Source: Dimorphilus gyrociliatus
Taxonomy: Eukaryota > Animalia > Annelida
Assembly (NCBI GenBank): GCA_904063045.1
Contig: CAJFCJ010000063.1
Coordinates: forward strand, 82,378 to 124,094
DNA length: 41,717 nucleotides
Direction: 5' to 3'
Below the pieces are notes generated by a model. The model was given only the letters and a program-made list of their open reading frames with translations, did not search any database and was not told the origin of the DNA. The translations under genes were made by a program, and so were the position numbers. This document shows, piece by piece, positions 1,833-41,717 of this stretch (the stretch's first letter is position 1; every line of letters starts with the position of its first letter).

Positions 1833-2767
1833 TGTACTTTGTTGTATTGTAATTGTAGGAATTTCTGGTTCGTCACAACTGTAATTGTCCTTTCCAATCA
1901 TTTACCAACTTGCCAAAGTACTGGTCCAAATAGAACCTTTAAAGTTCGTCCACAAATAGTCTAACAAAGGCAATTTCGGTAGAAATTGATTAACAAAACA
2001 CCAGTATTTCGTCCAAAGAATATGTATTGAGTAAAATGAGCTTCTAGTTCTAAACAAGCTAGTTTAAACAACTAGCTGACGGTTAGAAAACTGAACTATC
2101 AACTGTTAATTTCGTAGGGTTTATATACTCTTTTAAGGGTTGATAGTTCACAAATTTCAATGTTCACAAAAACAAAAGTAACATTTGAAGACAAAGAAAA
2201 GTTCTAAATATGGTCATGTTTTTATTGTTTTCCTCTTCTAAATAATAGTTGAATTTCGAAGGTTGGAGAGTTGCATAAGATGTAACAATTTTAGTAGGAC
2301 AAGTCCAACAATCAAGAAAACATGTAGATTGTATATTTGACCGTTTTTATATTCTACCTTAATAATGATATTCAATTGATTGAGTTAGTAAATTTAGCAT
2401 CAGCATATAAGGAGGAAGTATATCTGATTAATGCATGTTAAAAAGAACAGTATTGTGTATACAATACTGTTGAATAGTGAATATAATCTAAACTTAGAAT
2501 TTAAGCATAATTGATAATTAATTGAACTAGTTTTAGTTGGAAATCATAAATTTATGGATTAATAAATTGTAATATTAATGCTAGGTTGCAAATAGCAAAT
2601 ATTCTTTATATAATTTAATAGGTTTTATTGCTGCATAATGTGTATGCACTGCCCTATGCGAAACTAGGTCACTACTGCTTATCTTTATCAGTGCTATCTG
2701 CATAGTACAATACTGGTTCAATACTACTTCTCTATTGTAGAATATAGCTGACGAATGTATGTGTACA
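1833..2767 (-). mobile_element. LTR copy A (935 bp)
   Basis: Reverse complement of 22963-23866 apart from a ~31-bp indel and substitutions. Termini are TGTAC...GTACA (TG..CA), followed by a PBS-like motif and a gag-like ORF. Confidence 0.65.
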
Positions 2768-3766: not shown

Positions 3767-4705
3767 TTATCTTGCACAAGTTATCTTTTTGAGAAGATTT
3801 GTGTAAAATTTCCTGCTTTGGATTCTTACTGATGGTTTTGTATAACCATGAACAAGTGGATTTATTGTTGAATTTGAAAGAACAATTGCTGATATTGAAT
3901 TTGTAATTATCTGAAGTTTTGGTCCCAATTGAGTGTATCCTTCATTCAATCTATAATAATTAACAATTGACATTACAACTGGCACAGTCCATAAAAGCCA
4001 ATTGAATATTAATAAATAGGTTATGACTCTAATGCTAGTCCCTTCGGTTTCATATTTTTAACATTTGACACATCTGAAATTGCTCTTCTGTGTTTCCTTA
4101 CTGCTCTTAATATTGGTATATAGAAAAATAAACTGGCAGTGGTATTAGGAAGAATAACAATTAGTCCCCAAAAGTATAAATACGAGAATGAAAAGACAGT
4201 ATGAATGTCACATATAAAAGTAACATTTGATTTTAAAACACTGCTATATTTATTCCAGCCCATAACCGGAAGTGAGTTGACAATTATACTGATTAGCCAG
4301 ACAATGGCAAGTAAAACAAAAGCCGTCTTTCTTGTCCATAGTTTATGAAATTTAAAAGGATTTTTGATTGCTATAAATTTTTCAAATATAATGAGCGTTA
4401 CAGTGAATGATGATGCTGCAACAATCAAAAAGACCATTTGACTTGAAATGAGGCAAAGGTAATAGTTTTTTTGACTATTTTCCAAAAGAAAGACACAAGT
4501 GATAGTTATTGAATATAAAATATCAGTAACAGTCAATACAGTCACACCAAAATTTTTCAATTTCCACATGTCTTTAGTAATTATACCAATTAGGATTAAA
4601 TTACTATTTTAAAAACAAACCAACAATTTGATTACAGTACATCAATGATAATATAATAGTTTTAGCATTCAGCATCCTTGATGCTGTAAAGAGTAATAAA
4701 TACAT
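3767..4705 (-). pseudogene. Intronless class A (rhodopsin-like) GPCR with two single-base frameshifts
   Basis: Seven hydrophobic helices are recoverable, with EKF at the DRY position, LPVMGWN after TM4 and NSTINPLVHGY in TM7. There is a +1 A near 4610 and a -1 A near 4058, both in A-runs. The start codon is uncertain (4675 or 4705). Confidence 0.85.
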
Positions 4706-5405: not shown

Positions 5406-7900
5406 GAATACGACAGAAAACGGCCCCAACAGAAAACGGACCCAACAGAAAACGGCCTCAACTTGAACAGAAAACGGCCCCAACTGGAACAGAAAACGGC
5501 CCCAACTGAGACAGAAAACAGCCACAGGATTCTTCAACCTAAAATATATAAAACAAGAAATGAATTAAATTTTGAAAGTGTGTTTATTTGAAGAGTTGAA
5601 TACATTATGAGACTACAACTTAAAAGATCATGCAATTAAACAACAATTGATTTATTTATTGAGCTACTAAATAAAGTTCAGAACACTTTACTAGAACTTG
5701 TGATGAAGTAATCTCATGCTTTTCAAATCTTTCCCAAATTGAAAATATTTTATTTTGCAGGTTCTTATAAAGCTTTCTTTGGTATCTTAATATCTTCTTT
5801 TCTGATAACATTCTTTGATATGCTGCTATAAGGTCTGCTTCCCTTTTCAATTCATCTATCACAGAATAAAATGAAACATTCACTCCAACATTTCCATTCA
5901 ACCTATTGTGAAATCCCTCAACATCATTATTTGTTCTGATTGCACATTGATAGATAGACCAACATTTTGGTGACCAAACATCATTCAAAATCCAAGTTCT
6001 TTCAAAATAATCAATAAAATCAGCAAGTTTATCAATTGATTTAAGGTAATCCTTAATTTTAATAAACTCTATTGGAATAATGTGAGATGGAAGGAATGGC
6101 AAAGCCATTAGCTGTCTCATTTCAAACCATTGTCCATTTTTTTTGTTGAAGTCTGATGAATAACCAAGCTCCTAAAAAAACAAAATTAAAAATGACTCCA
6201 GTTTGAGTTTTAGGTTGAATAATACCTGAATTTTTCTATAAACTGCTTGATTCTAATGGAATAAGCATCCTGACAGATTTACATTTTCCCAATGATTTAA
6301 TACAGCTTTCCAAACAGCTTTTTCAAAATCCATAACTATCTTTTTTGGTTCCTTATATTGTAGCAGTTGATTAATGCACTTAAAAACAGTGAAATGAATA
6401 TTAAATGCATTTCAGAGAAAATTTCAAGTTGAACTACCTTGAATAACAGATTATATGCTTTTTTCTTTTTTGATGACATGAATGCATATAGAAGAGGAAC
6501 CTGTTTTAATTCACCTTCGTTTTTGAGGAATGAGTGAAATGAAAATAACTGTGTAAATGGGTCCTTAACAATCTTGAAAGTTCCATCTAAGTACCAGACT
6601 TTTGACACTGCAAGTAAGCTAAGTTGTTTTGAAGTGGAAAAAATAATCACTCTTTCATTTTTTTCAAGGACATCTTCCTTTAAGAAATCATCAGGAATGA
6701 AGCAATTATTAATAAGAAAGTTTCTTCCAATAGGTTCATTGGGACGATTTTTTCTTCTATGGTAATTTATCATTTCTTTGCAATTTTCAACTTTTACAAT
6801 ATTTCCCATATTTGCAAAAGGAAGCAGAACATTTTCAGCTATTTGTTTTCCACTAACATTGGTGTCAGTCTTTCCTTTTTGTTTTGCTGTCACTTTCATT
6901 TCAATAATTTGTTTTAAATTTTTTTTGGGGGGGTGAATATGATATTTAGACCCCAAAGAGAAGTTATTATTTCTTTGAACAACACTGGCAGGACATTTCA
7001 TTTTCTTGCTTCTAACTCCACATCTCCAAATTATGGAAGTCTTGTCTTTTCTTTTGACAACAAATGAGTGACCATTAGATACAAGTAATTCTTTGCCTTT
7101 TTGACTTCCTGTAGGGAATATTCTGAATTTACCATTGCTGTCATAGTTCACCTCTGGTATACTTTCAAAGGACTCCTCCATATTGATATCATTCTCATTC
7201 AAATGTAATGTATTTCCATGCAGAGGGCTGCTTTCACTAAGATTATCAACAAGCCTGTACTCTGAATCACAATTCAGTGTTTCAATAAGGGTAACCACTT
7301 CTTCATGATCAACATCCATTATTATATTTTGCACATCTATCTCTTCTCTTGAATGATTTAGATCTATATTTTCAGCATTTGAGACTTTATTGGTAGATTT
7401 ATCTTGTAAAATTTCATCACATTTGCTCAGAATAATTCTGATTCTTTTTTTATCAACACTTGAACATATAGAACATAATCCATCTACAAAAGAAAGAGCT
7501 TAGTTTACATTAAAATCAATTTGGATCTTACCTGATAAACAAGCCCAATGGACTTTATGATGACAAAGTGAACAAACACCTTGCTTCAGCTTATTAATCT
7601 TTTTCTTACATCCAAAACAATATGGTAGCATTGTGGCAAAAATCTCCTTTGAGCTGCTTTAACCTATTGGCAGGAATTTAAAAATAGTGCAAAATATTCA
7701 ACCTCTTAGGAAAAACTGGTGGACAATTTAATATTTTTTCATCCAATATTTACTAACTAATAGAAAAAAATTTTAAATTAACTTATTCTATTCAATTTAT
7801 GAGTATTGTATATTTTGAAATTTTGTGGCTGTTTTCTGTCTCAGTTGGGGCCGTTTTCTGTTGGGTCCGTTTTCTGTTGGGGCCGTTTTCTGTTGATCCC
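5406..7900 (-). mobile_element. Full-length MULE element E1 (2495 bp)
   Basis: Inverted subterminal arrays of AACAGAAAACGGCCCC at 5406-5527 and 7822-7900; ends GAATACGACAG and CTGTTGATCCC; encloses a transposase. Confidence 0.95.
5656..7631 (-). pseudogene. MULE transposase (PHD-like finger, FLYWCH finger, DDE), 4 exons, one in-frame TAG
   Basis: MLPYCFGC..CSLCHHKVHWAC/CSIC; GKELLVSNGHSF..WRC..C..HIH; WYLDGTFK, MDFEKA and RTNNDVEGFH. The three introns splice in frame. GCLFH*NQA carries a TAG at 6253-6255. Confidence 0.9.
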
Positions 7901-22962: not shown

Positions 22963-23866
22963 TGTACACATACATTCATCAGCTATATTCTACAATAGAG
23001 AAGTAGTATTGAACCAGTATTGTACTATGCAGATAGCACTGATAAATATAAGCAGTATTGACCTTGTTTCGCATAGGGCAGTGCATACACATTAGGCAGC
23101 AATAAAACCTATTAAATTATATAAAGAATATTTGCTATTTGCAACCTAGCATTAATATTACAATTTATTAATCCATACATTTATGATTTTGAACTAAAAC
23201 TAGTTCAATTAATTATCAATTATGCTTCAATTCTAAGTTTAGATTATATTCACTATTCAACAGTATTGTATACACAATACTGTTCTTCTTAACATGCATT
23301 AATCAGATATACTTCCTCTGCATATGCTGATGCTTGTTAAGGTAGAATATAAAAACAGTCAAATATACAATCTACATGTTTTCTTGATTGTTGCACTTGT
23401 CCTACTAAAATTGTTACATCTTATGCAACTCTCCAACCTGAGAAATTCAACTATTATTTAAAAGAGGAAAACAATAAAAACATGACCATATTTACAACTT
23501 TTCTTTGTCTTCAAATGTTACTTTTGTTTTTGTCAACATTGAAATTTGTCAACTATCAACCCTTAAAAGAGTATATAAACCCTACGAAATTAACAGTTGA
23601 CAGTTCAGTTTTCTAACCATCAGCTAGTTGTTTAAACTAGCTTGTTTAGAACTAGAAGCTCATTTTACTCAATACATATTCTTTGCACGAAATACTCGTG
23701 TTTTGTTGATTAATTTCTACCGAAATTGCCTTTGTTAGACTATTTGTGGACGAACTTTAAAGGTTCTATTTGTGTGAGTACTTTGGCAAGTTGGTAAATG
23801 ATTGGAAAGGACGATTACAGTTGTGACGAACCAGAAATTCCTACAATTACAATACAACAAAGTACA
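22963..23866 (+). mobile_element. Solo LTR copy B (904 bp)
   Basis: TGTAC...GTACA termini; flanks GTGTT/GTGTC (5-bp TSD with one mismatch); AATAAA at 23101. Confidence 0.68.
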
Positions 23867-28075: not shown

Positions 28076-30591
28076 GAATACGACAGAAAACGGCCCCAAC
28101 AGAAAACGGACCCAACAGAAAATGGCCTCAACTTGAACAGAAAACGGCCCCAACTTGAACAGAAAACGGCCCCAACTGAGACAGAAAACAGCCACAGGAT
28201 TCTTCAACCTAAAATATATAAAACAAGAAATGAATTAAATTTTGAAAGTGTGTTTATTTGAAGAGTTGAATACATTATGAGACTACAACTTAAAAGATCA
28301 TGCAATTAAACAAGAATTGATTTATTTATTGAGCTACTAAATAAAGTTCAGAACACTTTACTAGAACTTCTGATGAAGTAATCTCATGCTTTTCAAATCT
28401 TTCCCAAATTGAAAATATTTTATTTTGCAGGTTCTTATAAAGCTTTCTTTGGTATCTTAATATCTTCTTTTCTGATAACATTCTTTGATATGCTGCTATA
28501 AGGTCTGCTTCCCTTTTCAATTCATCTATCACAGAATAAAATGAAACATTCACTCCAACATTTCCATTCAACCTATTGTGAAATCCCTCAACATCATTAT
28601 TTGTTCTGATTGCACATTGATAGATAGACCAACATTTTGGTGACCAAACATCATTCAAAATCCAAGTTCTTTCAAAATAATCAATAAAATCAGCAAGTTT
28701 ATCAATTGATTTAAGGTAATCCTTAATTTTAATAAACTCTATTGGAATAATGTGAGATGGAAGGAATGGCAAAGCCATTAGCTGTCTCATTTCAAACCAT
28801 TGTCCATTTTTTTTGTTGAAGTCTGATGAATAACCAAGCTCCTAAAAAAACAAAATTAAAAATGACTCCAGTTTGAGTTTTAGGTTGAATAATACCTGAA
28901 TTTTTCTATAAACTGCTTGATTCTAATGGAATAAGCATCCTGACAGATTTACATTTTCCCAATTATTTAATACAGCTTTCCAAACAGCTTTTTCAAAATC
29001 CATAACTATCTTTTTTGGTTCCTTATATTGTAGCAGTTGATTAATGCCCTGAAAAACAGTGAAATGAATATTAAATGCATTTCAGAGAAAATTTCAAGTT
29101 GAACTACCTTGAATAACAGATTATATGCTTTTTTCTTTTTTGATGACATGAATGCATATAGAAGAGGAACCTGTTTTAATTCACCTTCTGTTTTGAGGAA
29201 TGAGTGAAATGAAAATAACTGTGTAAATGGGTCCTTAACAATCTTGAAAGTTTCATCTAAGTACCAGACTTTTGACACTGCAAGTAAGCTAAGTTGTTTT
29301 GAAGTGGAAAAAATAATCACTCTTTCATTATTTTCAAGGACATCTTTCTTTAAGAAATCATCAGGAATGAAGCAATTATTAATAAGAAAGTTTCTTCCAA
29401 TAGGTTCATTGGGACGATTTTTTCTTCTATGGTAATTTATCATTTCTTTGCAATTTTCAACTTTCACAATATTTCCCATATTTGCAAAAGGAAGCAGAAC
29501 ATTTTCAGCTATTCATTTTCCACTAACATTGGTGTCAGTCTTTCCTTTTTGTTTTGCTGTCACTTTCATTTCAATAATTTGTTCTAAATTTTTTTTGGGG
29601 GGGTGAATATGACATTTAGACCCCAAAGAGAAGTTATTATTTCTTTGAACGACACTGGCAGGACATTTCATTTTCTTGCTTCTAACTCCACATCTCCAAA
29701 TTATGGAAGTCTTGTCTTTTCTTTTGACAACAAATGAGTGACCATTAGATACAAGTAATTCTTTGCCTTTTTGACTTCCTGTAGGGAATATTCTGAATTT
29801 ACCATTGCTGTCATAGTTCACCTCTGGTATACTTTCAAAGGACTCCTCCATATTGACATCATTCTCATTCAAATGTAATGTATTTCCATGCAGAGGGCTG
29901 CTTTCACTAAGATTATCAACAAGCCTGTACTCTGCATCACAATTCAGTGTTTCAATAAGGGTAACCACTTCTTCATGATCAACATCCATTATTATATTTT
30001 GCACATCTATCTCTTCTCTTGAATGATTTAGATCTATATTTTCAGCATTTGAGACTTTATTGGTAGATTTATCTTGTAAAATTTCATCACATTTGCTCAG
30101 AATAATTCTGATTCTTTTTTTATCAACACTTGAACATATAGAACATAATCCATCTACAAAAGAAAGAGCTTAGTTTACATTAAAATCAATTTGGATCTTA
30201 CCTGATAAACAAGCCCAATGGACTTTATGATGACAAAGTGAACAAACACCTTGCTTCAGCTTATTAATCTTTTTCTTACATCCAAAACAATATGGTAGCA
30301 TTGTGGCAAAAATCTCCTTTGAGCTGCTTTAACCTATTGGCAGGAATTTAAAAATAGTGCAAAATATTCAACCTCTTAGGAAAAACTGGTGGACAATTTA
30401 ATATTTTTTCATCCAATATTTACTAACTAATAGAAAAAAATTTTAAATTAACTTATTCTATTCAATTTATGAGTATTGTATATTTCGAAATTTTGTGGCC
30501 GTTTTCTGTTCTGATTGGGGCCGTTTTCTGTTCATTTGTGGCCGTTTTCTTTTGGGTCCGTTTTCTGTTGGGGCCGTTTTCTGTTGATCCC
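28076..30591 (-). mobile_element. Full-length MULE element E2 (2516 bp), near-identical to E1
   Basis: About 20 substitutions versus E1 by eye; differs in the right subterminal array. Confidence 0.95.
28326..30301 (-). pseudogene. MULE transposase of E2, inactivated
   Basis: Same TAG as E1 (28923-28925), an extra TGA at 29513-29515, and LDGT changed to LDET. Confidence 0.9.
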
Positions 30592-30938: not shown

Positions 30939-31540
30939 ATGTGCGATAAATTAAGGAAAGATATTCAAGTTGCCTTGAACAATATAATATCATCTCCCAT
31001 TGTGAAAGAAAGATTTTTAGCAAAATTACCATATCAATATGTAAAGGATATTGCAATTTCAGTAAGTTTTCCCTTTTTCGAATAAACTTCTCTTTGAATT
31101 TATATCCCCTTTGTAAATTATAGATTTTAGAAACAACTCACCTTAACAACATCTTTTCAAAAGAAGATTTGAAATTTAAAATTGATGTAAATAATCACAT
31201 TTTTTTAGAAGGGGAAGGGGAAGAAGGTGCAGAAGATATTTATGATTTTCTTCACCTTATCTTTCATCTTCCCTCTAAGCCAAAACTAATTGAAATATTG
31301 AAAAATTTCTGTAGACTTTTGATGAAAAAATTGAATTTTTAGAAAAGATAATCAATGCAGTTGGTCAGTTTTTCTTTTTCTTCAATTATTTAAATATTTT
31401 TAAAGAATAACACAGAAAATTTTCATTTTTTAAAAATAATAAGGTAAAGAATTTCAAGAATCAGATTTTGTTCATGCAAAAGACATTATTTCCGGAATAA
31501 ATACTGAAAGAACTCTAAGGTTTTTGCAAATGTTAACAAA
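30939..31540 (+). other. IFT54/TRAF3IP1 (MIP-T3)-type N-terminal calponin-homology domain (exons 1-4)
   Basis: QVALNNIISSPIVKERFLAKLPYQYVKDI, DEKIEFLEKIINAV and DIISGINTERTLRFLQML align colinearly with the IFT54 N-terminus as recalled ([61 protein letters not shown]). Confidence 0.75.
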
Positions 31541-34500
31541 GATTCAAAGAAAAACAAATACAGAGAGAAAACAATCTTTTGGTAAACAAAATGATGACAA
31601 ATTTAGACTGGTTAACAGATCAATTCTAAAACTCTTTATTGCAGATGAAATGAATACAACATCACCTAAAAGAGGTAAAATCGGCGAAACAATAGACAAT
31701 GAGTGTTTAGTACATAAAAACAGGTTACCTATGAAATTATTATTTTCCCAAAGTAGACAGGTTAATACTGAAATATATTTCTACTGCAATAATTTCAACG
31801 GATCTTCACTTAAACACTTTCTCTTTTTATCTCTTAGAATCCTTTATATAGAATGAATAATGACAACGAAACCGTACAAATGAATACAATAGAACTGGAA
31901 AATGTAGGCTTTATTAATGATTATTTCTTTTGCTTAATCACTCAAGTAAAAGGATTAATTAAGGAATTTAATGAAGTAGTATCTTTATTGAAGTTATAGT
32001 TATTACACTTTTAAATTATATTATCATTTGACAGTTGCCATGGATACCTTATTCAGTTAAATTGAATAAATGTCAGAGTATTACTGATTGGTCAGTATTC
32101 TGGTTGTATAAATTAGATAATAAAAATCTTGTGGATAGATCAAAGATATTGAGAAAGGTATTGAAAAAATTGATAAAATATTTACATTTTAAATAATACA
32201 AGCAAATTACAAAACACTTTTTTTTCATTTATAGATTTTTTGTTTTGATGATTGTATTTCATTGAGCAACTGGACATTTGAAACTTGTGTAAATTATATG
32301 AAACAAATACAAATTGATAGTAATAGTACTTCAACTCTTTGGAATTTTGAAAAAATGCCACCAGGAGAATGTATATCATTAATTTATCAATTATCACAAA
32401 ATGTTTCTGGCAATTTAGGAGCTGTTAATCTCTATTTAAATCCGTCTGTTAATCCAGTTTATGGAGAAGATAATATGATATTTACAGAAAAAAGTTAGGT
32501 TTCCATTATTTTTTTTATACATAAAAATAATTCTCTCTTTCTCCTCCTTCTTCTTCTTCTTCTTCTTTTGAAATTAGTTACGCTCAACACTGATGAAAAT
32601 CATACAGACTTTTTAAATCATAAGAAAGCGCTTATTATTCATTTCCATAGTTTGTATGAACAAAAAGAAAGATCTTATGAAAGAATTTTCCAAAGAATTG
32701 ACTTTAAGTCATTAATAACAAGACAAAAAATTGATTTTTCTACAAATGTTTTCAACTATTGGAAAATGAATGATTGGACTTTTTACGATTGCTATGAGGT
32801 AAAATTTTATAATTGACCTTGACCTATAATGTAAGTAATTGATGGGATTTATCTTATTACAAAATTTTAGGATTATGTACATCTTGTATCTCCAAAGAGA
32901 GCAATTTTTCTCATACCATTTAATTTAAATTATAATGAAGAGAACCTTTCCAAATATTTTCTAGATGTCATTATTCAACTTTTACAAATGGTAACATTCT
33001 GTATTTTGACACAATTTTTTAAAAAATTTCGTTTTTTTGTTTGTTATAGAATCTCAATCCACAAACTCTACCAGTTATTATTTTTATAGGATTCAATACT
33101 AATATAAATGAAATATCAGCTACATATGCCCTTATTTCTATTATTGAATCTTTTATAAAAGACTTTCAGAATACTATAATTGAAAAGTCAAGGTATAGAT
33201 TGTTAAAGTTATTTTAAGTAGAAAAAAACACCAATTTTTATCTTTATAATAAAAGTGGTCCAAAATTTACAAAGTTAAATTTCAATGAACAAAATAACCT
33301 ACACAATTTAATGGCTGTAAACCAGTTGTTAACAGAACTAAAAGCAAATCTTGAAGATGATAATTCTCGTATTGTTTCTTTCCTAAATATTGATTCTAAA
33401 AATAGTAACGAGGTTAAAGTTAAACACTTTCCTTTTTAGTTTATTAATATATTATTAATGGTTTTCCATTTTTTCCCTTTAATTAGAATTCAGTTGAAAA
33501 ATTATTACTTTTGATGTCAGAAGCATTCGAACAGGTTTCAACTAGCAATCAACAATTTAATGTAAGGGTTTTAATTAGAGTGTTTAAATTGTGATTAAAG
33601 TCTCTACAAAGCTATTTTCACTTCTTTATAGTATACAAATGATGTTATTAATGGATTTATTGAAAGAATTGATAATCTATTAGAGAAAAAACAAGAATTT
33701 TTAAGTATAACTCAACTTACAAAAGAATTAAATATTGAAGGTAATTCTGTAGTAATTAGACAAGAAATCATTTATTATTAAAGTCTCCTCTTCACCTTTG
33801 ATTATCACAGATCTAGTTTGTTTGGAAAAAAAGTATCAAGTAAAGAAAATATACCAATTTCCATATCTTAAAATATTGAAATTATGTCATACATTAGTTA
33901 GTGTGTTTTTTTTTTCAATTTCATATTTTCAATACTTTTTACCTTTTTCATTCAAAAAATCCAGGGACTTTTAATACTTTTTAAGAGTTTTGGTAGTGAA
34001 GAATGGTTTATAGCTAATCCGAAATGGTTTGCTAATTTAGTACAAAATTTACATACCGTATCGGAAGATTGCGATTATCGTGTTGAAGATGACCTATTCT
34101 TTCTTCACAAGTCGACAAAAGTTTGCCTAAAAGCTAAATGGTATTTTTCAACAATTCCATCAAAATCAGTAAGTTTTTAAGTACTAAACTCTTGCAACGT
34201 TTTCTTTTTATAAAATAAAAAATAATCAAAATTCAGGATATTTTTGAAATTATTTTTGGGATTGAATTAGCTCTAACATTGCCATCTACTTCTTTATTAC
34301 TTCCCCTTCAATTATCATACTGCGAAAAGGAAATGACCAAGTTAATGGAGGTAGTAGATTTTTTTTAGGCAAAAGGTGATTTTTTTGTCTAAAAAGTGTG
34401 TAAAATTTGTGTTTAACTCTTAAAAGGATAACAATGATATTGCTCAAGTTTCAATGATCTACACATTTAAAACAAAATTAAGCGAATTGGCTCATTGGAG

Positions 34501-35879
34501 AATTATCTATTATATAAATTTACTTTTCTGGAAAAACGAAATAAATACGACTATTAGCGACCTCTATTACAATTGGATAACATTTTACGACGGACCGGCT
34601 GAAGCTTCTATATGTTTCAATGATGATGAATGTAAATCTATAAAGATATGTTGTAGAATTTTAAAAAATGAGAATTCTCCATCAATACTTGCACATTTAT
34701 TAAAGCAAATTGAAACAGCTGTTGAATATTCATTAAAAATTTCATCAGTCTACTTCTCAGTGAGTAAAAAATGTTTACTTTTCTCTATTTTGACAATCTA
34801 ATGGTAATATTTAATTTTCAATACTAGAAAATTCTATTTACTCCATGGGGTAATGTGTTAATTGAACCAGAATCTAATGATACTTACTCAACTGAATATT
34901 TGAAAAATAATTTAAATTTTTGTAAGTTAAATTTAAATTTTCAAATTAAATTTAATTTTATTTCTCTTTTTTTTTTAAATAGTCAATAATTTCAATGTAT
35001 ATTTTGAACATGAATTACATAATATCTATGAAATTGGCTGTGTTAATAAGTGTAATTTAAGAAGGCAACACTTTTTATGGAAAATGCATAAACAATTATA
35101 TCCAACTTTTAAAAATGAAATATTGTTTGAAGAGGAAGGAGATATTGTTTGTAATTTAGATGAAATTTTACAAACTTCCACTCTGTGTAGTAATATGAAT
35201 CCAGTCAATTTCTATTCAATTACATTAAGAAATTGTTCAAATTTAAAATTTGAATTAGCGTAAGTCAATTAGAGATTATTTTAAAAAGTTATTTGAAAAT
35301 ATATTCATTTATTTAAAAATTTCTAGTAAGGACAACTATTCTATAGTTTTCAATTCTGATGAGAAGAGAATTTATAAGAGTACTTCTAATGGTATTGAAA
35401 AATTATTTGATTTTGACGTTCAACAATTTTCTGCTCTAACAATAAAATTTATGCCCAGCTATGATCAACGAGGCTCTTACAAAACGGCTTATAAAGTCTA
35501 TTTTCTATTTATAGAAACATATTTAAATTTCAAATGTCTTACAATTATTTCTTTGCTAGGCTTTGAATACAAAGCTTAAACTTTATATGGACAATATCTT
35601 CATTGGAAATTTGTCAGAACCGGAATTAGAATTTACACTAAAGTTTCATAATGCGGATAAAAATTTAATAATTGATTTTACATATGCACCTGTAAGTTAT
35701 TCATTTGTGATTTTAACCTTTTATCTTCCTTTCTCTCTCTTCCTAACAGAGACAAGAAATGAAACATTCACGAAATGCGTTAGAAGTAGGTCAAAAATTA
35801 ATAAATAATGGACATATTTCAACTGTTGGTATGTTTAAAATGAGTATTTAAATAAAAGTGTTAGTTTGAATTAAAAAAT

Positions 35880-35919
<40 letters not shown>

Positions 35920-38900
35920 ACTGTCTTCCTAATAGAAAGTATCTCAGAAAAGAGAAAATTAATAGTAATATCAAGAAAAAGAATATTTCTACCAGTTTCT
36001 GAAAATTTTAAATCAATTGAATATTGTCAAGTTAGTTGGGAGAATTTAACAGAATTTCAACAATTTTTTAAAATATATTCAATTCAAGAAATGGAGATAC
36101 TTGGTTTGAAAAATTACTTAATTAATTAATTAATTTTTCTATCATAAAAAATTATTATCTTATAGAAAACTTCAAGGATTATTTAAATCTTTACGATTTT
36201 CAACCAGTTCCTGATATTTGGTTTGGGAAAATAATGAGTGCAAAGTCATCAGCAGATATTCTATCAACTTTAGCTGTTGATAGTGCAGTATGTTTCAAAA
36301 ATAGTGTTACATCATCTGGTAGAGATACATTTTCAATTTTTATCATTGACAAACTACTTTTAACCTTTAATTGCATTTTTTAAACAATACCAGGTTACAT
36401 TTTTCAAGAAATCTCAAAGATGACACGAGTAATTGGAAAAACTAGATTCAAAGTTTCTAACACGCTAGTAGGGATAATTTTCCCCCAAGAGCTAAGAAAT
36501 GATTCATTTATCTATTTAAATGAATTTGTTGATTATGATAAGATGACAGCCTATATTATCTGTTCTATGCCTTCAGGCCAAATGTTAACTGCTGAAAACC
36601 CTAGTCACATATTGAAAAAATCGGCTAAAACAATTTCAAAAGTGCATTGCCAAGAACATCTTGAACTATATACATTATACATTTTGACTAGATGGTTAAA
36701 TATTAATGATAAGAATGTAATAATCTCATTTAAGGACACGGCAAAAATAGCTTTTTCACTTTATTCTCTGTTTTTCTTTTTGTAGTTTGTCACTAATATT
36801 GAATCAAGTCAACTCGAATTCTATTTTTCATTCTTGATGAATAAATATTCAAATGATCGAATTATTGAATATTTTTCAAACTATGAAACAAGCAAATCAG
36901 TTGTTGAGCAAGTATGATAAAATTTTCCATTCTCTTATCCTTTTTGTATTCAATTATAATAATAAATGATTCCATTTTTTCAGGTTTTAAAAGAATCTTT
37001 TCAAGTTGATAATTTATTAGGAACACTGGATAATTTAAAAACAACATTTACGTGTTATCTTCATGAAAATGCATTGCCAACAACAAAAAATGAAAGACAG
37101 AAATATTTGCAATTACTAGACAATGATAAGATCCAAAATGTAAAAAGAGATTTCCTGAAAGAGAATAATTGCCATTGGTAAATAGTTTTCAATTACTTTA
37201 GTGATTAAAGTCTCTTCCTATTCTATTATATTTTACAGTTTTAAATATTTAACAAAATGGCGTATTATCAATAATAACATAAGAACGGAAGAGGAAGATG
37301 GTGAAGATGATGGAGGACTATTTGAAAATGTTGAAAAAATGCACAGATTAAAGGATATTTACTTGTTAAAGTGTAATATTCAAACAGCTTTAAAACATGT
37401 TGATAGGATTGCATATTCTATTGAAAATTTTCAAATTATCAAGAGTCCTATCAAGACTATCCACCCTTCAATTGGAAAATGTTCATTAATAACTACTTTA
37501 CGCTTTGAAAATCTTCTACTATCAGACCTACCAATGGAATTGTCCAATCTAACTCTTTTAAAATTTTTATATCTTACGGGAAATTTATTTGAAAATGTTC
37601 CAAAAGTGATCAGTCAACTTTCAAATTTAACACAATTAAATCTAGATGCAATCAATTTCACACCATTTCATTCAAAGATACTAGAAACTGATATAGTATC
37701 GCTTGAAGAGTGGAAATATACCTACAACGAAAATTATTCTCAGTTGAGTAGTGTTGGATTTGATGAAGGAAGTATGATGAAACTCTTCAAGGAAATCGCA
37801 AGTGATGATAGTTTAAAAAGTAGAGATGAAATTCAAGAATTTCATGCAGTTCTTTATAAAAAACTACCTAGAATTACTTCTTGGAATGTTTTGGAAAATC
37901 TACATAAACAATCATTCAAAATACTTGTTATATTAAATTTAAAATATACCAGTTTTCAAACTTTGGATGATAGTATTGAATATTTGGAGAATTTACATAT
38001 TTTAGACATATCCTTTAATTTACTATTAGAAGAGATTAGCCCAAAAATCGCTTATCTTCCACTACAGACACTATATTTAGAAAATTGTCCATCATTGAGA
38101 ACACCTCCAAAGGTAATAGCAGTCAAAAGTCTAAAACATATACAAAACTATATGAGAGCTTTAGACAAGGGTTATGTATCTTGTAAAAGAACAAAATTAA
38201 TGCTTGTCGGTCTTGGAGGAGGTGGAAAAACAAGTTTAATGACTTCACTAACAGAAAATAATCAGGAAGAAAGTGAACAATTGGTAAAAAGTACTAAAGT
38301 TACAGATGGAATTTGTATTAGAAAATGGCTTGTTCAATCTATTGAATATTCAATATGGGATTTTGCAGGACAAACTGTCTATTATAATACTCATCAGTTC
38401 TTTTTATCAAATAGAGCCGTATATTTTTTGGTATGGAATGTTAGATCTGGAGAGGAGCATGCTGGTTTAAAATTCTGGTTGAATTCTATAAAATGTCATG
38501 CTCCTAAAGCACCTGTATTCATTGTAGGAACTCACATTGATCAGGTATTTTTCATACAGCTGCAATTAGGTCTAACTTTTTTTAACAATGAAATTACAAT
38601 GACGTTAGGTTGAAAAATCTGAATTACCAACCATCAAATATCAAGAAAAATATCCACAAATTAAAGGATTTTATAATGTCTCTTCACTAACCAAAAAAGT
38701 TTGTTTGTTCACATTTTTAAATGATAACTTTTTAAGAAACTTAAATTTTACAAAAATAAGGGTCTTAACGAATTAGTTGATGGTTTAATTAACATAACTA
38801 TTAACGAAAAATATATGAATGAGAAAATACCAAACTTTTGGTTAGATTTTGAAGAAAAATTATACAAGTATGCAAAAAAGAAATTCAAGTATTGAAATAT

Positions 38901-41717
38901 ATAAGAATATTAACTTTACCTTGAACAGAGTTAGCAAAACTTTAAATATAATCTCTATAGAGGAAGCCATCGGATTTGCTGAAGAAACTGGTATAATTGA
39001 TAAGGCTGAGGTTGATATTAAAATATTATTACATAACTCAATGATTCACTCTCTCTTCTAGTTTTATCAAGCAGTTGAATTTCTTCACGAATTAGGATCT
39101 ATTCAATACTTTCAAAATGAATACTTAAGGAAACAAATCATTATAAATCCTCAATGGATTGTTGATGTAATGGCTTGCGTTGTTTCCGTTCAAGAGAATT
39201 CAATAAAAGTTTGTATATAGGCCTAATTAGGAGGTATTTTTCATGCCGATATTCTTTTATTTTTAATCTAGAATGGAAAATTATTGCATGATGATTTGAA
39301 CAAAATTTGGCCCAGTGAGTCATACTCTAATCTTCACAAATGGCTTCTACGTTTAACTGAAGAGTTTGACTTAACATTTTCGTTGAAGAATGAAAGAGCA
39401 AGTTTAGTTCCCTGTCTTCTTCCTGATATTGAACCAGAGGTAAATGCATAGAATGTTTTAAAAATGATGTCTTTGAAGGTGACTTCAATGTTATAGAATG
39501 CTTGGGAAAAAGAATCTTTAAAGGAAGGGGAAAGTGAAACCAAAATGGTATATAAGTTTGACTACTTGCCTTTTGGATTATTTAACAGAGTCCAAGTTAG
39601 ATTATTTGAGTATGGTGATGAGTTTCTGATATGGAAAACTGGCTCTTATCTCACGAAAAATGGCCATAGAGGTATTTTAAAGAGAAAAAGGTATATAATC
39701 ATTTTTCTCACATGAATCAACAAGTTTATCTTTTACTTTTGTTAGCTCTTCAAAAATTCTTATCAAAGTTAGAGGATTTAAACCCGAAAATGTCCTCTTT
39801 CTCGTCCATGAAGTACTTGAAACACTAATTGCTGAATCTTTTCAAGGAGTTGAATTCAATTTTATGACGCCTTGTCCTGAATGTATTTATCATAAAATAC
39901 AACATCCTAGTATGGTTGAATCCTGGAGAATAAGAAAAGCTATGCAATTAAAAATTCCTTTTCTACAATGTACTCATAATTTTCATACTGTGTCTATAAC
40001 ACAACTTCAAAGTGAGTTTTGAGTTGTTTCAACATGCTAACTCTTGACAAAAAACTCTTCACTATAGATATGTTACCTCCTGAGAGCAGTGAGGAATTAG
40101 ATATGCATCTGCAAAATGCTGTTAGAGAATTAAAGAAAATTCAATTAAGGCCTATAAAAGATGTTTTAATGTTATATTGTTTGGCCGATGTTCCTTCAAA
40201 TGAGTCGGAAAGTTGTAATCATATCTCCGCATTGAGAATAAAAAATGAATTGGAAAAAGCTGGCTTTTATGTGTAAAATTCAAAAAAAAAAAAAGAAAAA
40301 TTTTTGATATTTTAAATTAAAAAAAATTACTTTTTCATTATCAGGAAAATGTTTAATGATTCTTGTGAAAATTACGTTGAAGAGGCGATATCTTCACTAA
40401 AATCTACACAAGTAGTACTCACACTGATGACAGATGATTTCATTAAGAATTCAACTTGTAGAAATTTATTCATTTATACAAAAAAGAATTTAGCTAAACA
40501 GAATCAGTTAATATTAATTAAAGAGAGCGATAAATGGAAAAAACATACAGATATTGGTATGCTGTGCTCAGATGATGTAAATATTTTCATTTAAATATCA
40601 ATTGCCTTTTACTTATATTTAAAAACTAATGATTTATCCATTTTCTCTCTCTTCTTCCTTCCTTCTCCTAACTTTTTTAGATATACATAAACATGCAAAA
40701 TGTTGAGAAATTTAGCGCAAAGATGAACGATTTGAAAAATTCGTTAAGTGTCAATTCAAAACCAACAAAATGGCCGCCGTGTTTTATAAGTTATTGTTGG
40801 AGTAATTCTCAAATGGCAATAAATAAAGGGACTAAAATGAATAAAAAAGCACTTGGTAAAACTGATCCAAGGTTATTAAAGGATAAACTTGAAGAAGCTG
40901 GAATTAATTGTTGGATGGATATTGAACAAGTAAATAGAGGTGGTTTATTTCAAGATATTGCTGAAGGCTTAAAAAAGGCTAAAATTGTTGTAGCTTGTGT
41001 ATCAGATGAGTACATTTTATCTAAAAATTGCCAAATGGAATTTCGTTTTGCATCTCTAACATTAAGATTACCAATTATTCTTGCAATTGTTGGAACTGGT
41101 AAAAATTGGATTCAATCCGAAATTGGTATGATATCTTTATCATATCCAAGAGTTAATCTTCAAGAAATGGATACCAACATTGTAGAAGTTGTTAATCTTG
41201 TCAAGGAAAAGATTGGTACAGAAGAATTAGATGAAAATGTCAGAATTGAAAAGGAGATTCATCATGAAGAATTTACAGAATTATTAGAATTAGCTGAAAG
41301 AAAATTACTAAGGCAATTGGCAACTTTACAAAATCTATCAAGAGGATTCAATTTTCCTCATATTCCAATATTAGATTATTCAACAAATTCAACTGAAAAT
41401 ACTACAAATCGATATCGTTTTGTCTTCCTTTGTGAGTGCGATCAGGTAAACAATTTTCAAACTCAATTAAAAATCAACAATTTTTTTAATTTTTTATTAT
41501 CATAGGGTTGGCATTTACCTGACAATCATCAAAGTATTCAATGGAATGTTCCATTTGAAAGTAGAGAAGCTGAAAAATATATGACAGAATGGTCTGGTTA
41601 TTTAGTTAGAATTTACGCTATTCTCCAACACAGTTCAATTCCATTGTTAGTGTTTAAAAATAAAGAAAGAAGTGATTTTATTGAGCAGATGCAATCAAAA
41701 TTAATCAGAAAAAATAA
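30939..41717 (+). CDS. Giant Roco-family protein: CH(IFT54-like), pseudoRoc-COR, unknown, LRR, Roc, COR, TIR-like, TIR; runs off the window
   Basis: About 38 exons join in frame via GT-AG introns with no stop found. P-loop GLGGGGKTS (38209-38235), WDFAG, THID, COR motifs FLHELG..INPQW and YKFDYLPFGLF, and TIR CFISYCWS..CWMD..VSDEY..SKNCQMEF. The ATG assignment is less certain than the rest. Confidence 0.9.
32579..34759 (+). other. Degenerate Roc-COR module
   Basis: Colinear self-similarity to the intact Roc-COR at 38185-39990; no P-loop or DxxG. Confidence 0.7.
35885..35915. repeat. (CT)n microsatellite (intronic)
   Basis: Read directly. Confidence 0.9.

What the first reader, a model, noticed from the sequence alone, without database searches (positions are those of the whole stretch)
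32579..34759. Hidden pseudo-GTPase Roc-COR upstream of the real one
Seen (degenerate vs intact, same order): DWTFYDCYEDYVHLVSPKRAIFLIPFNL vs IWDFAGQTVYYNTHQFFLSNRAVYFLVWNV; PQTLPVIIFIG vs PKAPVFIVG; GLLILF..FIANPKWF vs GSIQYF..IIINPQWI; IELALTL..LLLPLQL vs FDLTFSL..LVPCLL; MIYTF vs MVYKF; IKICCR vs ILIKVR. The G1, G3 and G4 motifs are lost, yet the exons stay open. Inference: a retained pseudo-Roc-COR that may form an intramolecular pseudo-dimer.
Basis: partly seen in the sequence, partly recalled or inferred. Interest (0 to 1): 0.8.

Follow-up and report, generated by a model that had tools for sequence, protein, structure and literature searches.

The report
Dead Roc-COR module before live one
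One very long, transcribed gene of the small marine worm Dimorphilus gyrociliatus carries a second, degenerate copy of the Roc-COR GTPase switch (the core of the Parkinson's protein LRRK2) upstream of its working copy, and relatives from molluscs to amphioxus carry the same dead copy, which no paper I could search describes.

Summary
They lie in exons that a spliced RNA contig joins to the real LRR-Roc exon. The spliced frame stays open for 1535 codons. The COR half of the claim is firmly supported. A profile of the upstream modules finds only LRRK1 and LRRK2 COR-A among solved structures. An AlphaFold model of this gene's segment matches the Chlorobium Roco COR domain at Z 14.8. The Roc half is supported only indirectly. 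It shows no significant sequence similarity to any G domain. However, the homologous module of an amphioxus relative folds as a Ras-like domain plus COR (Z about 12), and the worm exons align colinearly with that module. The canonical P-loop and DxxGQ patterns occur only in the live Roc of all 15 family members checked; loss of G4 was read by eye. The public gene model skips most of the pseudo-Roc. The proposed pseudo-dimer within one chain was not tested. The scan had already reported this architecture on another piece of this genome. Verdict: real, a new variant of a known kind.

The parts
30939..31540 (+). First exons of the gene: N-terminal MIP-T3/IFT54-type CH-like domain (start codon at 30939)
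   Evidence: P0001 (the annotated product, 100% identical) starts here. Pfam MIP-T3 gives E 7.1e-7 and 29.6 bits, above the cutoff, on P0001:9-109.
32578..32798 (+). Exon pE1: pseudo-Roc strand 1, the degenerate P-loop place (HFHSLYEQKERS), helix 1, strands 2-3, and the degenerate G3 place (FYDCYE)
   Evidence: The 3' junction 32798>32871 is seen in a spliced contig. The 5' junction (donor 32494, 84-nt intron) is inferred and keeps the frame. This exon is absent from the annotated protein P0001. The secondary-structure assignment comes from pattern and position only.
32871..32990 (+). Exon pE2: pseudo-Roc helix 2, strand 4, helix 3
   Evidence: It is 41% identical to paralog P0004:24-62 (BLASTP E 2.8e-7). 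The best, but not significant, local match to real Roc lies here. It is absent from P0001.
33050..33192 (+). Exon pE3: pseudo-Roc strand 5, the degenerate G4 place (GFNTNI), helix 4
   Evidence: GT..AG intron 32991-33049 is inferred. The exon is colinear with P0004. P0001 includes only its 3' part.
33256..33412 (+). Exon pE4: conserved F-N-x-Q-x-N helix and putative strand 6
   Evidence: P0001:390-441. The motif is shared with paralogs, molluscs and amphioxus.
33487..33561 (+). Exon pE5: putative last helix of the pseudo-Roc
   Evidence: Junctions 33412>33487 and 33561>33632 are in the spliced contig. P0001:442-466.
33632..34350 (+). Exons pE6-pE9 (33632-33740, 33811-33896, 33965-34168, 34237-34350): pseudo-COR-A
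   Evidence: All junctions are in spliced contig record 1. hhalign against real COR-A covers this stretch. The profile hits LRRK1 and LRRK2 COR-A in the PDB. The AF2 model matches the 3dpt COR domain. Exon pE8 alone scores 14 bits on the iterated Roc-COR HMM.
34427..35259 (+). Exons pE10-pE12 (34427-34759, 34828-34921, 34983-35259): pseudo-COR-B and its tail; the module ends near 35000-35259, beyond the finding's end
   Evidence: hhalign pairs MIYTF with MVYKF and IKICCR with ILIKVR. The VIA alignment to the COR domain runs to model residue 433, which is P0001:787. Junctions come and from record arithmetic.
35327..37177 (+). Eight linker exons between the dead and live modules, about 450 codons, with no recognised domain
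   Evidence: Spliced contig record 1. The frame is open. Pfam finds nothing. P0001 skips 35936-36103, 36394-36716 and 36786-36911.
37239..38544 (+). Large exon: LRR repeats plus the live Roc (GLGGGGKT, WDFAGQ, THID)
   Evidence: Pfam Roc E 1.4e-22, plus LRR families. P0001:1105-1539. The exon is joined to the upstream exons by junction 37177>37239.
38609..40013 (+). Exons of the live COR-A and COR-B
   Evidence: Pfam COR-A E 1.7e-10 and 5e-10; COR-B E 2.8e-8 and 2.9e-16. The region is 50-58% identical across phyla.
40016..41717 (+). C-terminal exons with TIR domains; the gene runs off the window
   Evidence: Pfam TIR_2 E 5e-12 and E 2.6e-16 with two stretches on P0001:1880-2321.

Best explanation
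Window 30939 to beyond 41717 is one gene of Dimorphilus gyrociliatus, DgyrCDS14676. The protein is probably about 2700 residues long. The public model has 2321 and skips several exons that the RNA supports.

Domain order is: CH-like domain, dead Roc-COR, a linker of about 450 residues, LRR, live Roc-COR, two TIR domains.

The segment 32578 to about 35259 is an ancient internal copy of the Roc-COR unit. It keeps the fold: a COR-A winged-helix part, a COR-B part and, most likely, a Ras-like alpha/beta domain. It has lost the P-loop, the DxxG motif and the NKxD-type motif, so it cannot be expected to bind or hydrolyse GTP. That makes it a pseudoGTPase module.

Shown here:
- It is transcribed, spliced and in frame with the live module.
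- Its COR part is homologous to real COR and is predicted to have the COR fold.
- The module occurs in relatives from five phyla.
- None of the 15 family members checked has a canonical P-loop or DxxGQ motif at the corresponding places of the module.

Inferred mechanism, at about one chance in four. Roco GTPases are controlled by COR-mediated dimerisation (established for Chlorobium Roco and LRRK2). On that basis the dead module would serve as a built-in, nucleotide-blind partner or docking surface for the live Roc-COR. GTP binding by the live Roc would then change how the two modules pack, and so whether the C-terminal TIR domains can assemble.
For: One transcript with an open frame: a spliced contig of 3925 nt joins exons from about 33255 to 38367 through 14 listed GT..AG joints, and a second contig shows 32798>32871. 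There are 1535 codons without a stop, against an expected 56 stops in 646 codons.

Identity of the gene: the LRR-Roc exon is 100% identical to P0001, which is CAD5126586.1 DgyrCDS14676.

COR homology:
- hhalign of the upstream modules (A1) against real Roc-COR (A2) gives 95.6% probability, E 1.1e-8 and 175 columns. The wider alignment gives 96.2% and E 2.1e-9.
- The A1 profile against all PDB sequences finds only LRRK1 (E 2.9e-5) and LRRK2 (E 2e-4), in COR-A.
- An HMM built only from P-loop-bearing Roc-COR domains hits P0001:494-667 at E 6.6e-4. After one iteration it hits 420-670 at 53 bits.
- The reverse search, with a pseudo-COR HMM, hits the COR-A site of more than 25 real Roco proteins, always about 95 residues after the end of Roc.

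COR fold: the AF2 model of P0001:355-880 has pTM 0.60. Its top 30 Foldseek hits are all Roco COR domains. VIA-align gives Z 14.8 against 3dpt_B, with 251 of 299 residues aligned.

Roc fold: the AF2 model of the amphioxus module P0013:290-770 shows the Ras order of strands and helices. Residues 9-211 match Rab, Ras and Cdc42 at Z 11.4-12.3, rmsd about 3.2 A, over about 150 residues. Residues 214-481 match COR at Z 12.6.

Link from the worm to that module: hhalign of a worm-only profile against a profile of the other phyla gives one colinear alignment from pseudo-Roc helix 2 to COR-B, E 1.2e-8. The Roc part alone gives P 3e-4.

Language-model features of paralog P0162:1-330 lie nearest to COR-A and Roc+COR-A clusters, score 0.94.

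Motif loss is universal among the members checked.
Against: The pseudo-Roc has no significant sequence similarity to real Roc or to any solved G domain.

I could not fold this gene's own pseudo-Roc. No database protein contains exons pE1-pE3 in full, and the joined spliced model was not to be sent to tools.

The fold evidence for the Roc part therefore comes from a relative about 15% identical, modelled at pLDDT of about 60-78 from an alignment of 18 sequences.

The junctions 32494>32578, 32990>33050 and 33192>33256 are not in the listed RNA joints. The annotated isoform skips pE1, pE2 and part of pE3, so some transcripts may lack the pseudo-Roc.

Nothing here bears on contact between the two modules. 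Pfam recognises none of the pseudo exons.
Confidence: 0.75

Rival explanations
1. Only the COR part is a degenerate duplicate. The roughly 240 residues before it (pE1-pE5) are an unrelated alpha/beta domain, and its strand-helix rhythm merely resembles a G domain.
For: No profile or pairwise test links pE1-pE3 to Roc or to any GTPase. MAFFT stacks the three exon fragments on one another, as any repeated strand-helix unit would.
Against: The homologous amphioxus module is predicted as a complete Ras-like fold placed directly before COR, as in every Roco protein. The worm module aligns colinearly with it from helix 2 onward. The best local matches to real Roc, though weak, fall at the corresponding strands.
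Confidence: 0.15
2. The segment is a decaying duplicate or a separate pseudogene that read-through transcripts happen to include. It has no role in the protein.
For: It evolves much faster than the live module: 12-26% identity in A1 against 47-58% in A2. The public gene model leaves part of it out.
Against: It has 646 codons with no stop where about 56 are expected. Its small introns are spliced precisely and in frame. The module is present in four or more worm paralogs and in molluscs, a brachiopod, a nemertean and amphioxus. The fold is still predictable.
Confidence: 0.03
3. The upstream module still binds a nucleotide or another ligand in a non-canonical way and acts as a second, slow switch rather than as a dead scaffold.
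For: Some pseudoGTPases keep nucleotide binding without hydrolysis (my own knowledge of the pseudoGTPase literature; not tested here). The G-like fold appears to be kept.
Against: No GK[ST], no DxxG and no [NT]KxD at the corresponding places in this gene, read directly from the sequence. The canonical P-loop and DxxGQ patterns are missing from the module of every member checked. The amphioxus copy reads VGDHTPAS at the P-loop place.
Confidence: 0.05

Closest known systems
Canonical Roco proteins: LRRK2, LRRK1, MFHAS1/MASL1, Chlorobium tepidum Roco
   Same: A Ras-like domain is followed directly by COR-A and COR-B. The upstream module's profile and model match exactly these proteins. The downstream half of the same protein is a normal LRR-Roc-COR.
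   Different: Canonical members, as described in the papers and reviews I searched, have one Roc-COR, and it is competent for GTP. Here a second copy without G1, G3 or G4 precedes it in the same chain.
Proteins with two P-loop-bearing Roc domains in one chain: Pyrinomonadaceae MAG protein HEY0321628.1 (P0120) and Branchiostoma belcheri XP_019630255.1 (P0137)
   Same: P0120 carries two full Roc-COR units on one polypeptide (165-622 and 687-1136). P0137 gives a full Roc-COR hit at 575-1150 plus further Roc-COR hits downstream.
   Different: Both have two P-loops (GEGGAGKT and GEPSAGKT in P0120; GEKMAGKT and GQFRSGKT in P0137), though the regex found only one canonical DxxGQ motif in each. In the worm family the first copy is dead in every member checked. 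I did not test whether these tandems share an origin with the worm family.
PseudoGTPase domains, for example the pG1 and pG2 domains of p190RhoGAP, or CENP-M (from my own knowledge, not tested here)
   Same: A G-domain fold is kept, the nucleotide motifs are lost, and the domain is used as a structural or regulatory part of a larger protein.
   Different: Those examples are not Roc domains, are not followed by COR, and do not sit beside a live copy of themselves.
Pseudokinase-kinase tandem of JAK kinases, JH2-JH1 (analogy only, from my own knowledge)
   Same: A dead copy of the catalytic module sits upstream of the live copy in one chain, which suggests regulation in cis.
   Different: The fold and the chemistry are different. 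Nothing here shows that the two Roc-COR modules touch.

Membership tests
Roco family (Roc-COR supradomain), applied to the upstream module | COR-A and COR-B domains homologous to those of known Roco proteins | tested here: met
   hhalign 95.6%, E 1.1e-8. The PDB profile search finds only LRRK1 and LRRK2 COR-A. The AF2 model matches 3dpt_B at Z 14.8 with 251 residues aligned. The top 30 Foldseek hits are all Roco COR.
Roco family (Roc-COR supradomain), applied to the upstream module | A Ras-like G-domain fold directly N-terminal of COR-A | tested here: inconclusive
   Met for the homologous amphioxus module: Z 11.4-12.3 against Rab and Ras over about 150 residues. For this gene's own exons the evidence is limited to colinear profile alignment with that module (P 3e-4; E 1.2e-8 for the whole module). 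The worm pseudo-Roc itself could not be folded.
Roco family (Roc-COR supradomain), applied to the upstream module | GTP-binding motifs G1 (GxxxxGK[ST]), G3 (DxxG) and G4 ([NT]KxD) | tested here: not met
   Direct reading gives HFHSLYEQKERS, FYDCYE and GFNTNI. The regex finds canonical G1 and G3 only in the live Roc of each family member. The module is therefore a derivative of the family's supradomain, not a functional Roc.
Roco family, applied to the downstream module of the same gene | Roc with intact motifs, followed by COR-A and COR-B | tested here: met
   Pfam Roc E 1.4e-22, COR-A E 1.7e-10, COR-B E 2.9e-16. GLGGGGKT and WDFAGQ are present.
PseudoGTPase (a G-domain fold that lacks nucleotide binding or hydrolysis) | Experimentally shown lack of GTP binding or hydrolysis | not testable with these tools
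   Only the loss of motifs is shown. A binding assay is needed.
GAD-type regulation (G proteins activated by nucleotide-dependent dimerisation through COR) | COR-B to COR-B contact, here between the dead and live modules in cis | not tested
The two modules together with the linker exceed the 1200-residue limit, and pieces may not be joined.

The most novel reading that the evidence does not exclude
The dead Roc-COR pairs in cis with the live Roc-COR through their COR-B surfaces. A single chain would then mimic the Roco homodimer: a built-in, concentration-independent GAD switch in which GTP binding by the one live Roc opens the pseudo-dimer and licenses assembly of the C-terminal TIR domains. 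The arrangement would date from before the split of protostomes and deuterostomes.
Probability: 0.25. Interest if true: 0.8.

Novelty: new variant of a known kind. Interest (0 to 1): 0.62.

Why it matters
How dimerisation through COR controls the Roc GTPase is still debated for LRRK2 (reviews PMC6337361 and PMC6320773; the monomer-dimer cycle of the Chlorobium homologue, PMC5714945).

A natural protein that fuses a nucleotide-blind Roc-COR to a live one offers an asymmetric, single-chain version of that dimer. It could be expressed and solved, and it could be compared with the tandems that carry two P-loops.

The finding also flags a widespread invertebrate family that joins Roco and TIR domains and is probably involved in innate immunity or cell death. 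Public annotation calls its members 'uncharacterized' or 'non-specific serine/threonine protein kinase', and gene models often miss the degenerate module, as happens here.

Tried and rejected
Searches and tests that gave nothing:
- Pfam on each pseudo exon.
- BLASTP of the real Roc-COR pieces against the six-frame window: nothing significant.
- phmmer of single exons pE8 and pE10 against the PDB.
- Atlas features of exon pE10: no usable hit.
- Roc-COR HMMs against single exons: only pE8 (14 bits) and pE10 (5 bits) rise above noise; pE1-pE3 do not.
- hhalign of pseudo-Roc profiles against real Roc: E 0.12 and 0.68.
- An HMM of the non-worm pseudo-Roc against single worm exons: background level.
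- The pseudo-Roc profile (A6) against PDB sequences: nothing.
- Pfam on the linker.

dN/dS: the only close pair, P0004 and P0162, is a mosaic of 100%-identical and 20-30%-identical blocks, probably from gene conversion. Other paralogs are saturated. No clean estimate was possible, so it was not attempted.

A word search with P0004:1-420 found only one more paralog, P0162. Its model also starts inside the pseudo-Roc.

Rejected readings:
- Chance resemblance: rejected for the COR part.
- A separate pseudogene: rejected by the RNA evidence and the open frame.

Exons were searched one by one by reference, and database proteins (P0001 and its relatives) were used for profiles and folds. Exons were joined only inside scripts, to count stops and check reading frames.
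Full report
THE LOCUS

The window is AT-rich (about 28% GC). It carries a gene with very small GT..AG introns.

Pfam on the open stretches downstream of the finding shows an ordinary Roco architecture:
- LRR plus Roc in one large exon, 37186-38610 (Roc E 1.4e-22).
- COR-A (E 1.7e-10 and 5e-10).
- COR-B (E 2.8e-8 and 2.9e-16).
- TIR_2 (E 5e-12).

A search of 1.84 billion representative proteins with the LRR-Roc exon returned a 100% identical protein, P0001, of 2321 residues. It is CAD5126586.1, DgyrCDS14676 of the annelid Dimorphilus gyrociliatus. P0001 starts at 30939 with a MIP-T3/IFT54-type CH-like domain (E 7.1e-7).

THE OBSERVATION

I laid the contigs of the one public run that holds this DNA on 32500-38499. 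These contigs lack the introns. A contig of 3925 nt joins exons from about 33255 to 38367 through 14 listed GT..AG joints of 58-76 nt.

Five further introns follow from GT..AG ends, reading frame, and the arithmetic of the contig coordinates. With them the spliced frame from 32571 to 38559 holds 1535 codons and no stop.

The 12 exons of the candidate module hold 646 codons with no stop. The other two frames have 53 and 83 stops, and 2000 shuffles have a mean of 56 and a minimum of 33. The 5' junction into the first pseudo exon (donor 32494, acceptor ending at 32577, 84 nt) keeps the frame, but no listed joint shows it.

So the segment is coding, expressed, and on the same RNA as the live Roc.

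The public gene model differs from this picture. P0001 joins 32493 directly to about 33090, so it omits pE1, pE2 and the start of pE3, which is most of the pseudo-Roc. It also omits three linker exons.

IS IT COR?

Single-sequence tests fail: Pfam on the exons, BLASTP against the real pieces, and phmmer against the PDB.

Profiles succeed:
- The worm has at least four more paralogs that share the upstream region: P0003, P0004, P0011 and P0162.
- An HMM of their upstream regions hits the COR-A site of more than 25 genuine Roco proteins. The hit is always about 95 residues after the end of Roc and always uses the same part of the HMM.
- An HMM built only from 146 P-loop-bearing Roc-COR domains finds a second, upstream hit in amphioxus P0013 (463-731, E 3.6e-7; 1.6e-7 for its cluster mates P0151 and P0153), the scallop Ylistrum P0017 (E 7e-7), this gene's P0001 (494-667, E 6.6e-4) and others.
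- After one more round, P0001:420-670 scores 53 bits. Lingula and Haliotis proteins join at E of about 2e-7.
- With the tools' own aligner, the upstream modules (A1, 17 sequences, no real Roc-COR among them) match real Roc-COR (A2) at 95.6% probability and E 1.1e-8. The alignment pairs GLLILF..FIANPKWF with GSIQYF..IIINPQWI, IELALTL..LLLPLQL with FDLTFSL..LVPCLLP, MIYTF with MVYKF, and IKICCR with ILIKVR.
- The A1 profile searched against all PDB sequences finds only LRRK1 (E 2.9e-5) and LRRK2 (E 2e-4), in COR-A.
- AlphaFold2 on P0001:355-880 with A1 gives pTM 0.60, with a confident core at model residues 120-400. Its 30 best Foldseek matches are all Roco COR domains. VIA-align gives Z 14.8, rmsd 5.6 A and 251 of 299 residues against the Chlorobium COR domain 3dpt_B, over model residues 115-433.

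The COR-like part runs from about 33632 to about 35000, which is past the finding's end.

IS IT ROC?

Here the sequence signal is gone. The pseudo exons are not detected by Roc-COR HMMs. A pseudo-Roc profile finds nothing in the PDB.

Structure prediction on a relative gives the evidence:
- The amphioxus module P0013:290-770 was folded with an alignment of upstream modules only and without templates. It shows the strand and helix order of a Ras-like domain.
- Its residues 9-211 match Rab35, Rab21, KRAS and Cdc42 at Z 11.4-12.3, rmsd about 3.2 A, over about 150 residues.
- Its residues 214-481 match COR at Z 12.6. Roc-COR tandems are the best Foldseek hits over 485-544 columns.
- Its P-loop place reads VGDHTPAS.

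The link to the worm rests on these results:
- Exons pE1 (its end), pE2, pE3 and pE4 align colinearly with the N-terminus of paralog P0004 (pE2 at E 2.8e-7).
- A worm-only pseudo-Roc profile matches the pseudo-Roc profile of the other phyla at P 3e-4 over 107 columns.
- Worm-only and non-worm whole-module profiles, each aligned separately, give one colinear alignment from helix 2 of the pseudo-Roc to COR-B at E 1.2e-8.
- A motif F-N-x-Q-x-N, followed by a strand and a helix ending in EKLL-like residues, is shared across phyla at the place of strand 6 and the last helix. I read this by eye.
- Language-model features of P0162:1-330 lie nearest to COR-A and Roc+COR-A clusters (score 0.94). This counts as a lead only.

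I could not fold this gene's own pseudo-Roc. No database protein holds exons pE1-pE3 in full, and the joined spliced model was not to be sent to tools. I put the Roc reading at about 0.7-0.75 and the COR reading above 0.95.

MOTIFS AND AGE

Each of the 15 family members checked has exactly one canonical P-loop and one WDFAGQ in its live Roc, and neither motif at the strand-1 or strand-3 place of the upstream module. The one extra P-loop pattern match, GQCNFGKS at residue 449 of amphioxus P0013, lies well away from the strand-1 place.

The live Roc-COR is 47-58% identical between the worm and molluscs, nemertean, brachiopod and amphioxus. The upstream module is 12-26% identical.

The module occurs in Annelida, Mollusca, Brachiopoda, Nemertea (weakly, E 4e-3) and Cephalochordata. 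It therefore most likely predates the split of protostomes and deuterostomes, and it was already dead in the common ancestor or died early.

In amphioxus the upstream COR is followed by a TIR domain and MBT repeats. That suggests the duplicated unit was Roc-COR-TIR.

MECHANISM

The identity of the module is shown. Its role is inferred.

From published work on Chlorobium Roco and LRRK2 (for example PMC5714945 and PMC6337361), COR-B mediates dimerisation, and the GTPase cycle is coupled to a change between monomer and dimer. A nucleotide-blind Roc-COR in the same chain is well placed to act as a permanent partner or docking surface for the live one.

Other roles remain open, such as oligomerisation between molecules or recruitment of other proteins next to the CH domain.

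No fold job could hold both modules, and no dN/dS estimate was possible because the close paralogs are mosaics.

WHAT IS KNOWN

Four full-text searches found no description of a dead Roc-COR beside a live one. Phrases such as 'two Roc domains' refer to dimers.

Tandems in which both copies carry a P-loop do exist, in a Pyrinomonadaceae MAG protein and in a Branchiostoma belcheri protein.

The scan itself had already noted this architecture. Report s1-172110, on another piece of this genome, reaches the same conclusion, and several first-reader notes describe paralogs. I used those notes as leads, for the organism's name and for where to look for relatives, and I tested the claims independently here.

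VERDICT

The module is a new variant of a known kind, the Roco family: a conserved pseudoGTPase Roc-COR that public annotation misses.

Noticed in passing
window 32493-33090, 35936-36103, 36394-36911: The public gene model DgyrCDS14676 (P0001) skips exons that spliced RNA contigs include. These are most of the pseudo-Roc (pE1, pE2 and the start of pE3) and three linker exons. The true product is probably about 2700 residues rather than 2321.
   Followed up: yes
window 30939-31540: The gene begins with a MIP-T3/IFT54-type CH-like domain (Pfam E 7.1e-7 on P0001:9-109). This is a tubulin-binding-type domain and is unusual for a Roco protein.
   Followed up: partly
window 40016-41502: Two TIR-like regions follow the live COR. 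Pfam reports two TIR_2 stretches on P0001:1880-2321. I did not examine catalytic residues.
   Followed up: no
window 35327-37177: A linker of about 450 residues between the dead and live modules has no recognisable domain in the worm. Relatives carry MBT repeats (Pecten, amphioxus), PLAT (Haliotis) or a TIR (amphioxus) between the two modules, and SPRY (Ylistrum, Sinanodonta) in the long region upstream of the live LRR-Roc, though not necessarily between the modules.
   Followed up: partly
P0120 (HEY0321628.1, Pyrinomonadaceae MAG) 165-622 and 687-1136; P0137 (B. belcheri) 575-1150 and 1363-1780: These proteins carry two P-loop-bearing Roc domains in one chain, and in P0120 both sit in full Roc-COR units. 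They are possible two-P-loop counterparts of the dead-plus-live arrangement.
   Followed up: partly
P0004 and P0162 (DgyrCDS9496 and DgyrCDS9499, same contig): These two neighbouring paralogs are a mosaic of 100%-identical blocks and blocks of 20-30% identity. This suggests recent gene conversion or exon shuffling within the family.
   Followed up: no
window 5406-5705 and 28076-28375; ORFs 6339-7334(-) and 29516-30004(-): A repeated element is present in two direct copies (99% identical over 300 nt). Each copy lies next to an ORF with a FLYWCH zinc finger (E about 1e-11). It is probably a transposon-derived repeat just upstream of the Roco gene.
   Followed up: partly
window 1833-2767 and 22963-23866: A pair of inverted repeats of about 900 nt, 96-97% complementary, lies 20 kb apart.
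   Followed up: no
window 4024-4569 (-): An ORF with a rhodopsin-family 7TM receptor domain (Pfam 7tm_1, E 1.7e-17). It probably belongs to a GPCR gene on the minus strand.
   Followed up: no
window 35872-35927: A (CT)n microsatellite lies inside the 107-nt intron 35829-35935. The reads tool skipped it as a repeat, which is why that junction had to be inferred from contig arithmetic.
   Followed up: yes
P0003 (DgyrCDS14654) residues 1-300: This paralog's model begins with a signal peptide and lectin-like sequence in place of a CH domain and pseudo-Roc. It looks like a fusion with an upstream gene model.
   Followed up: no
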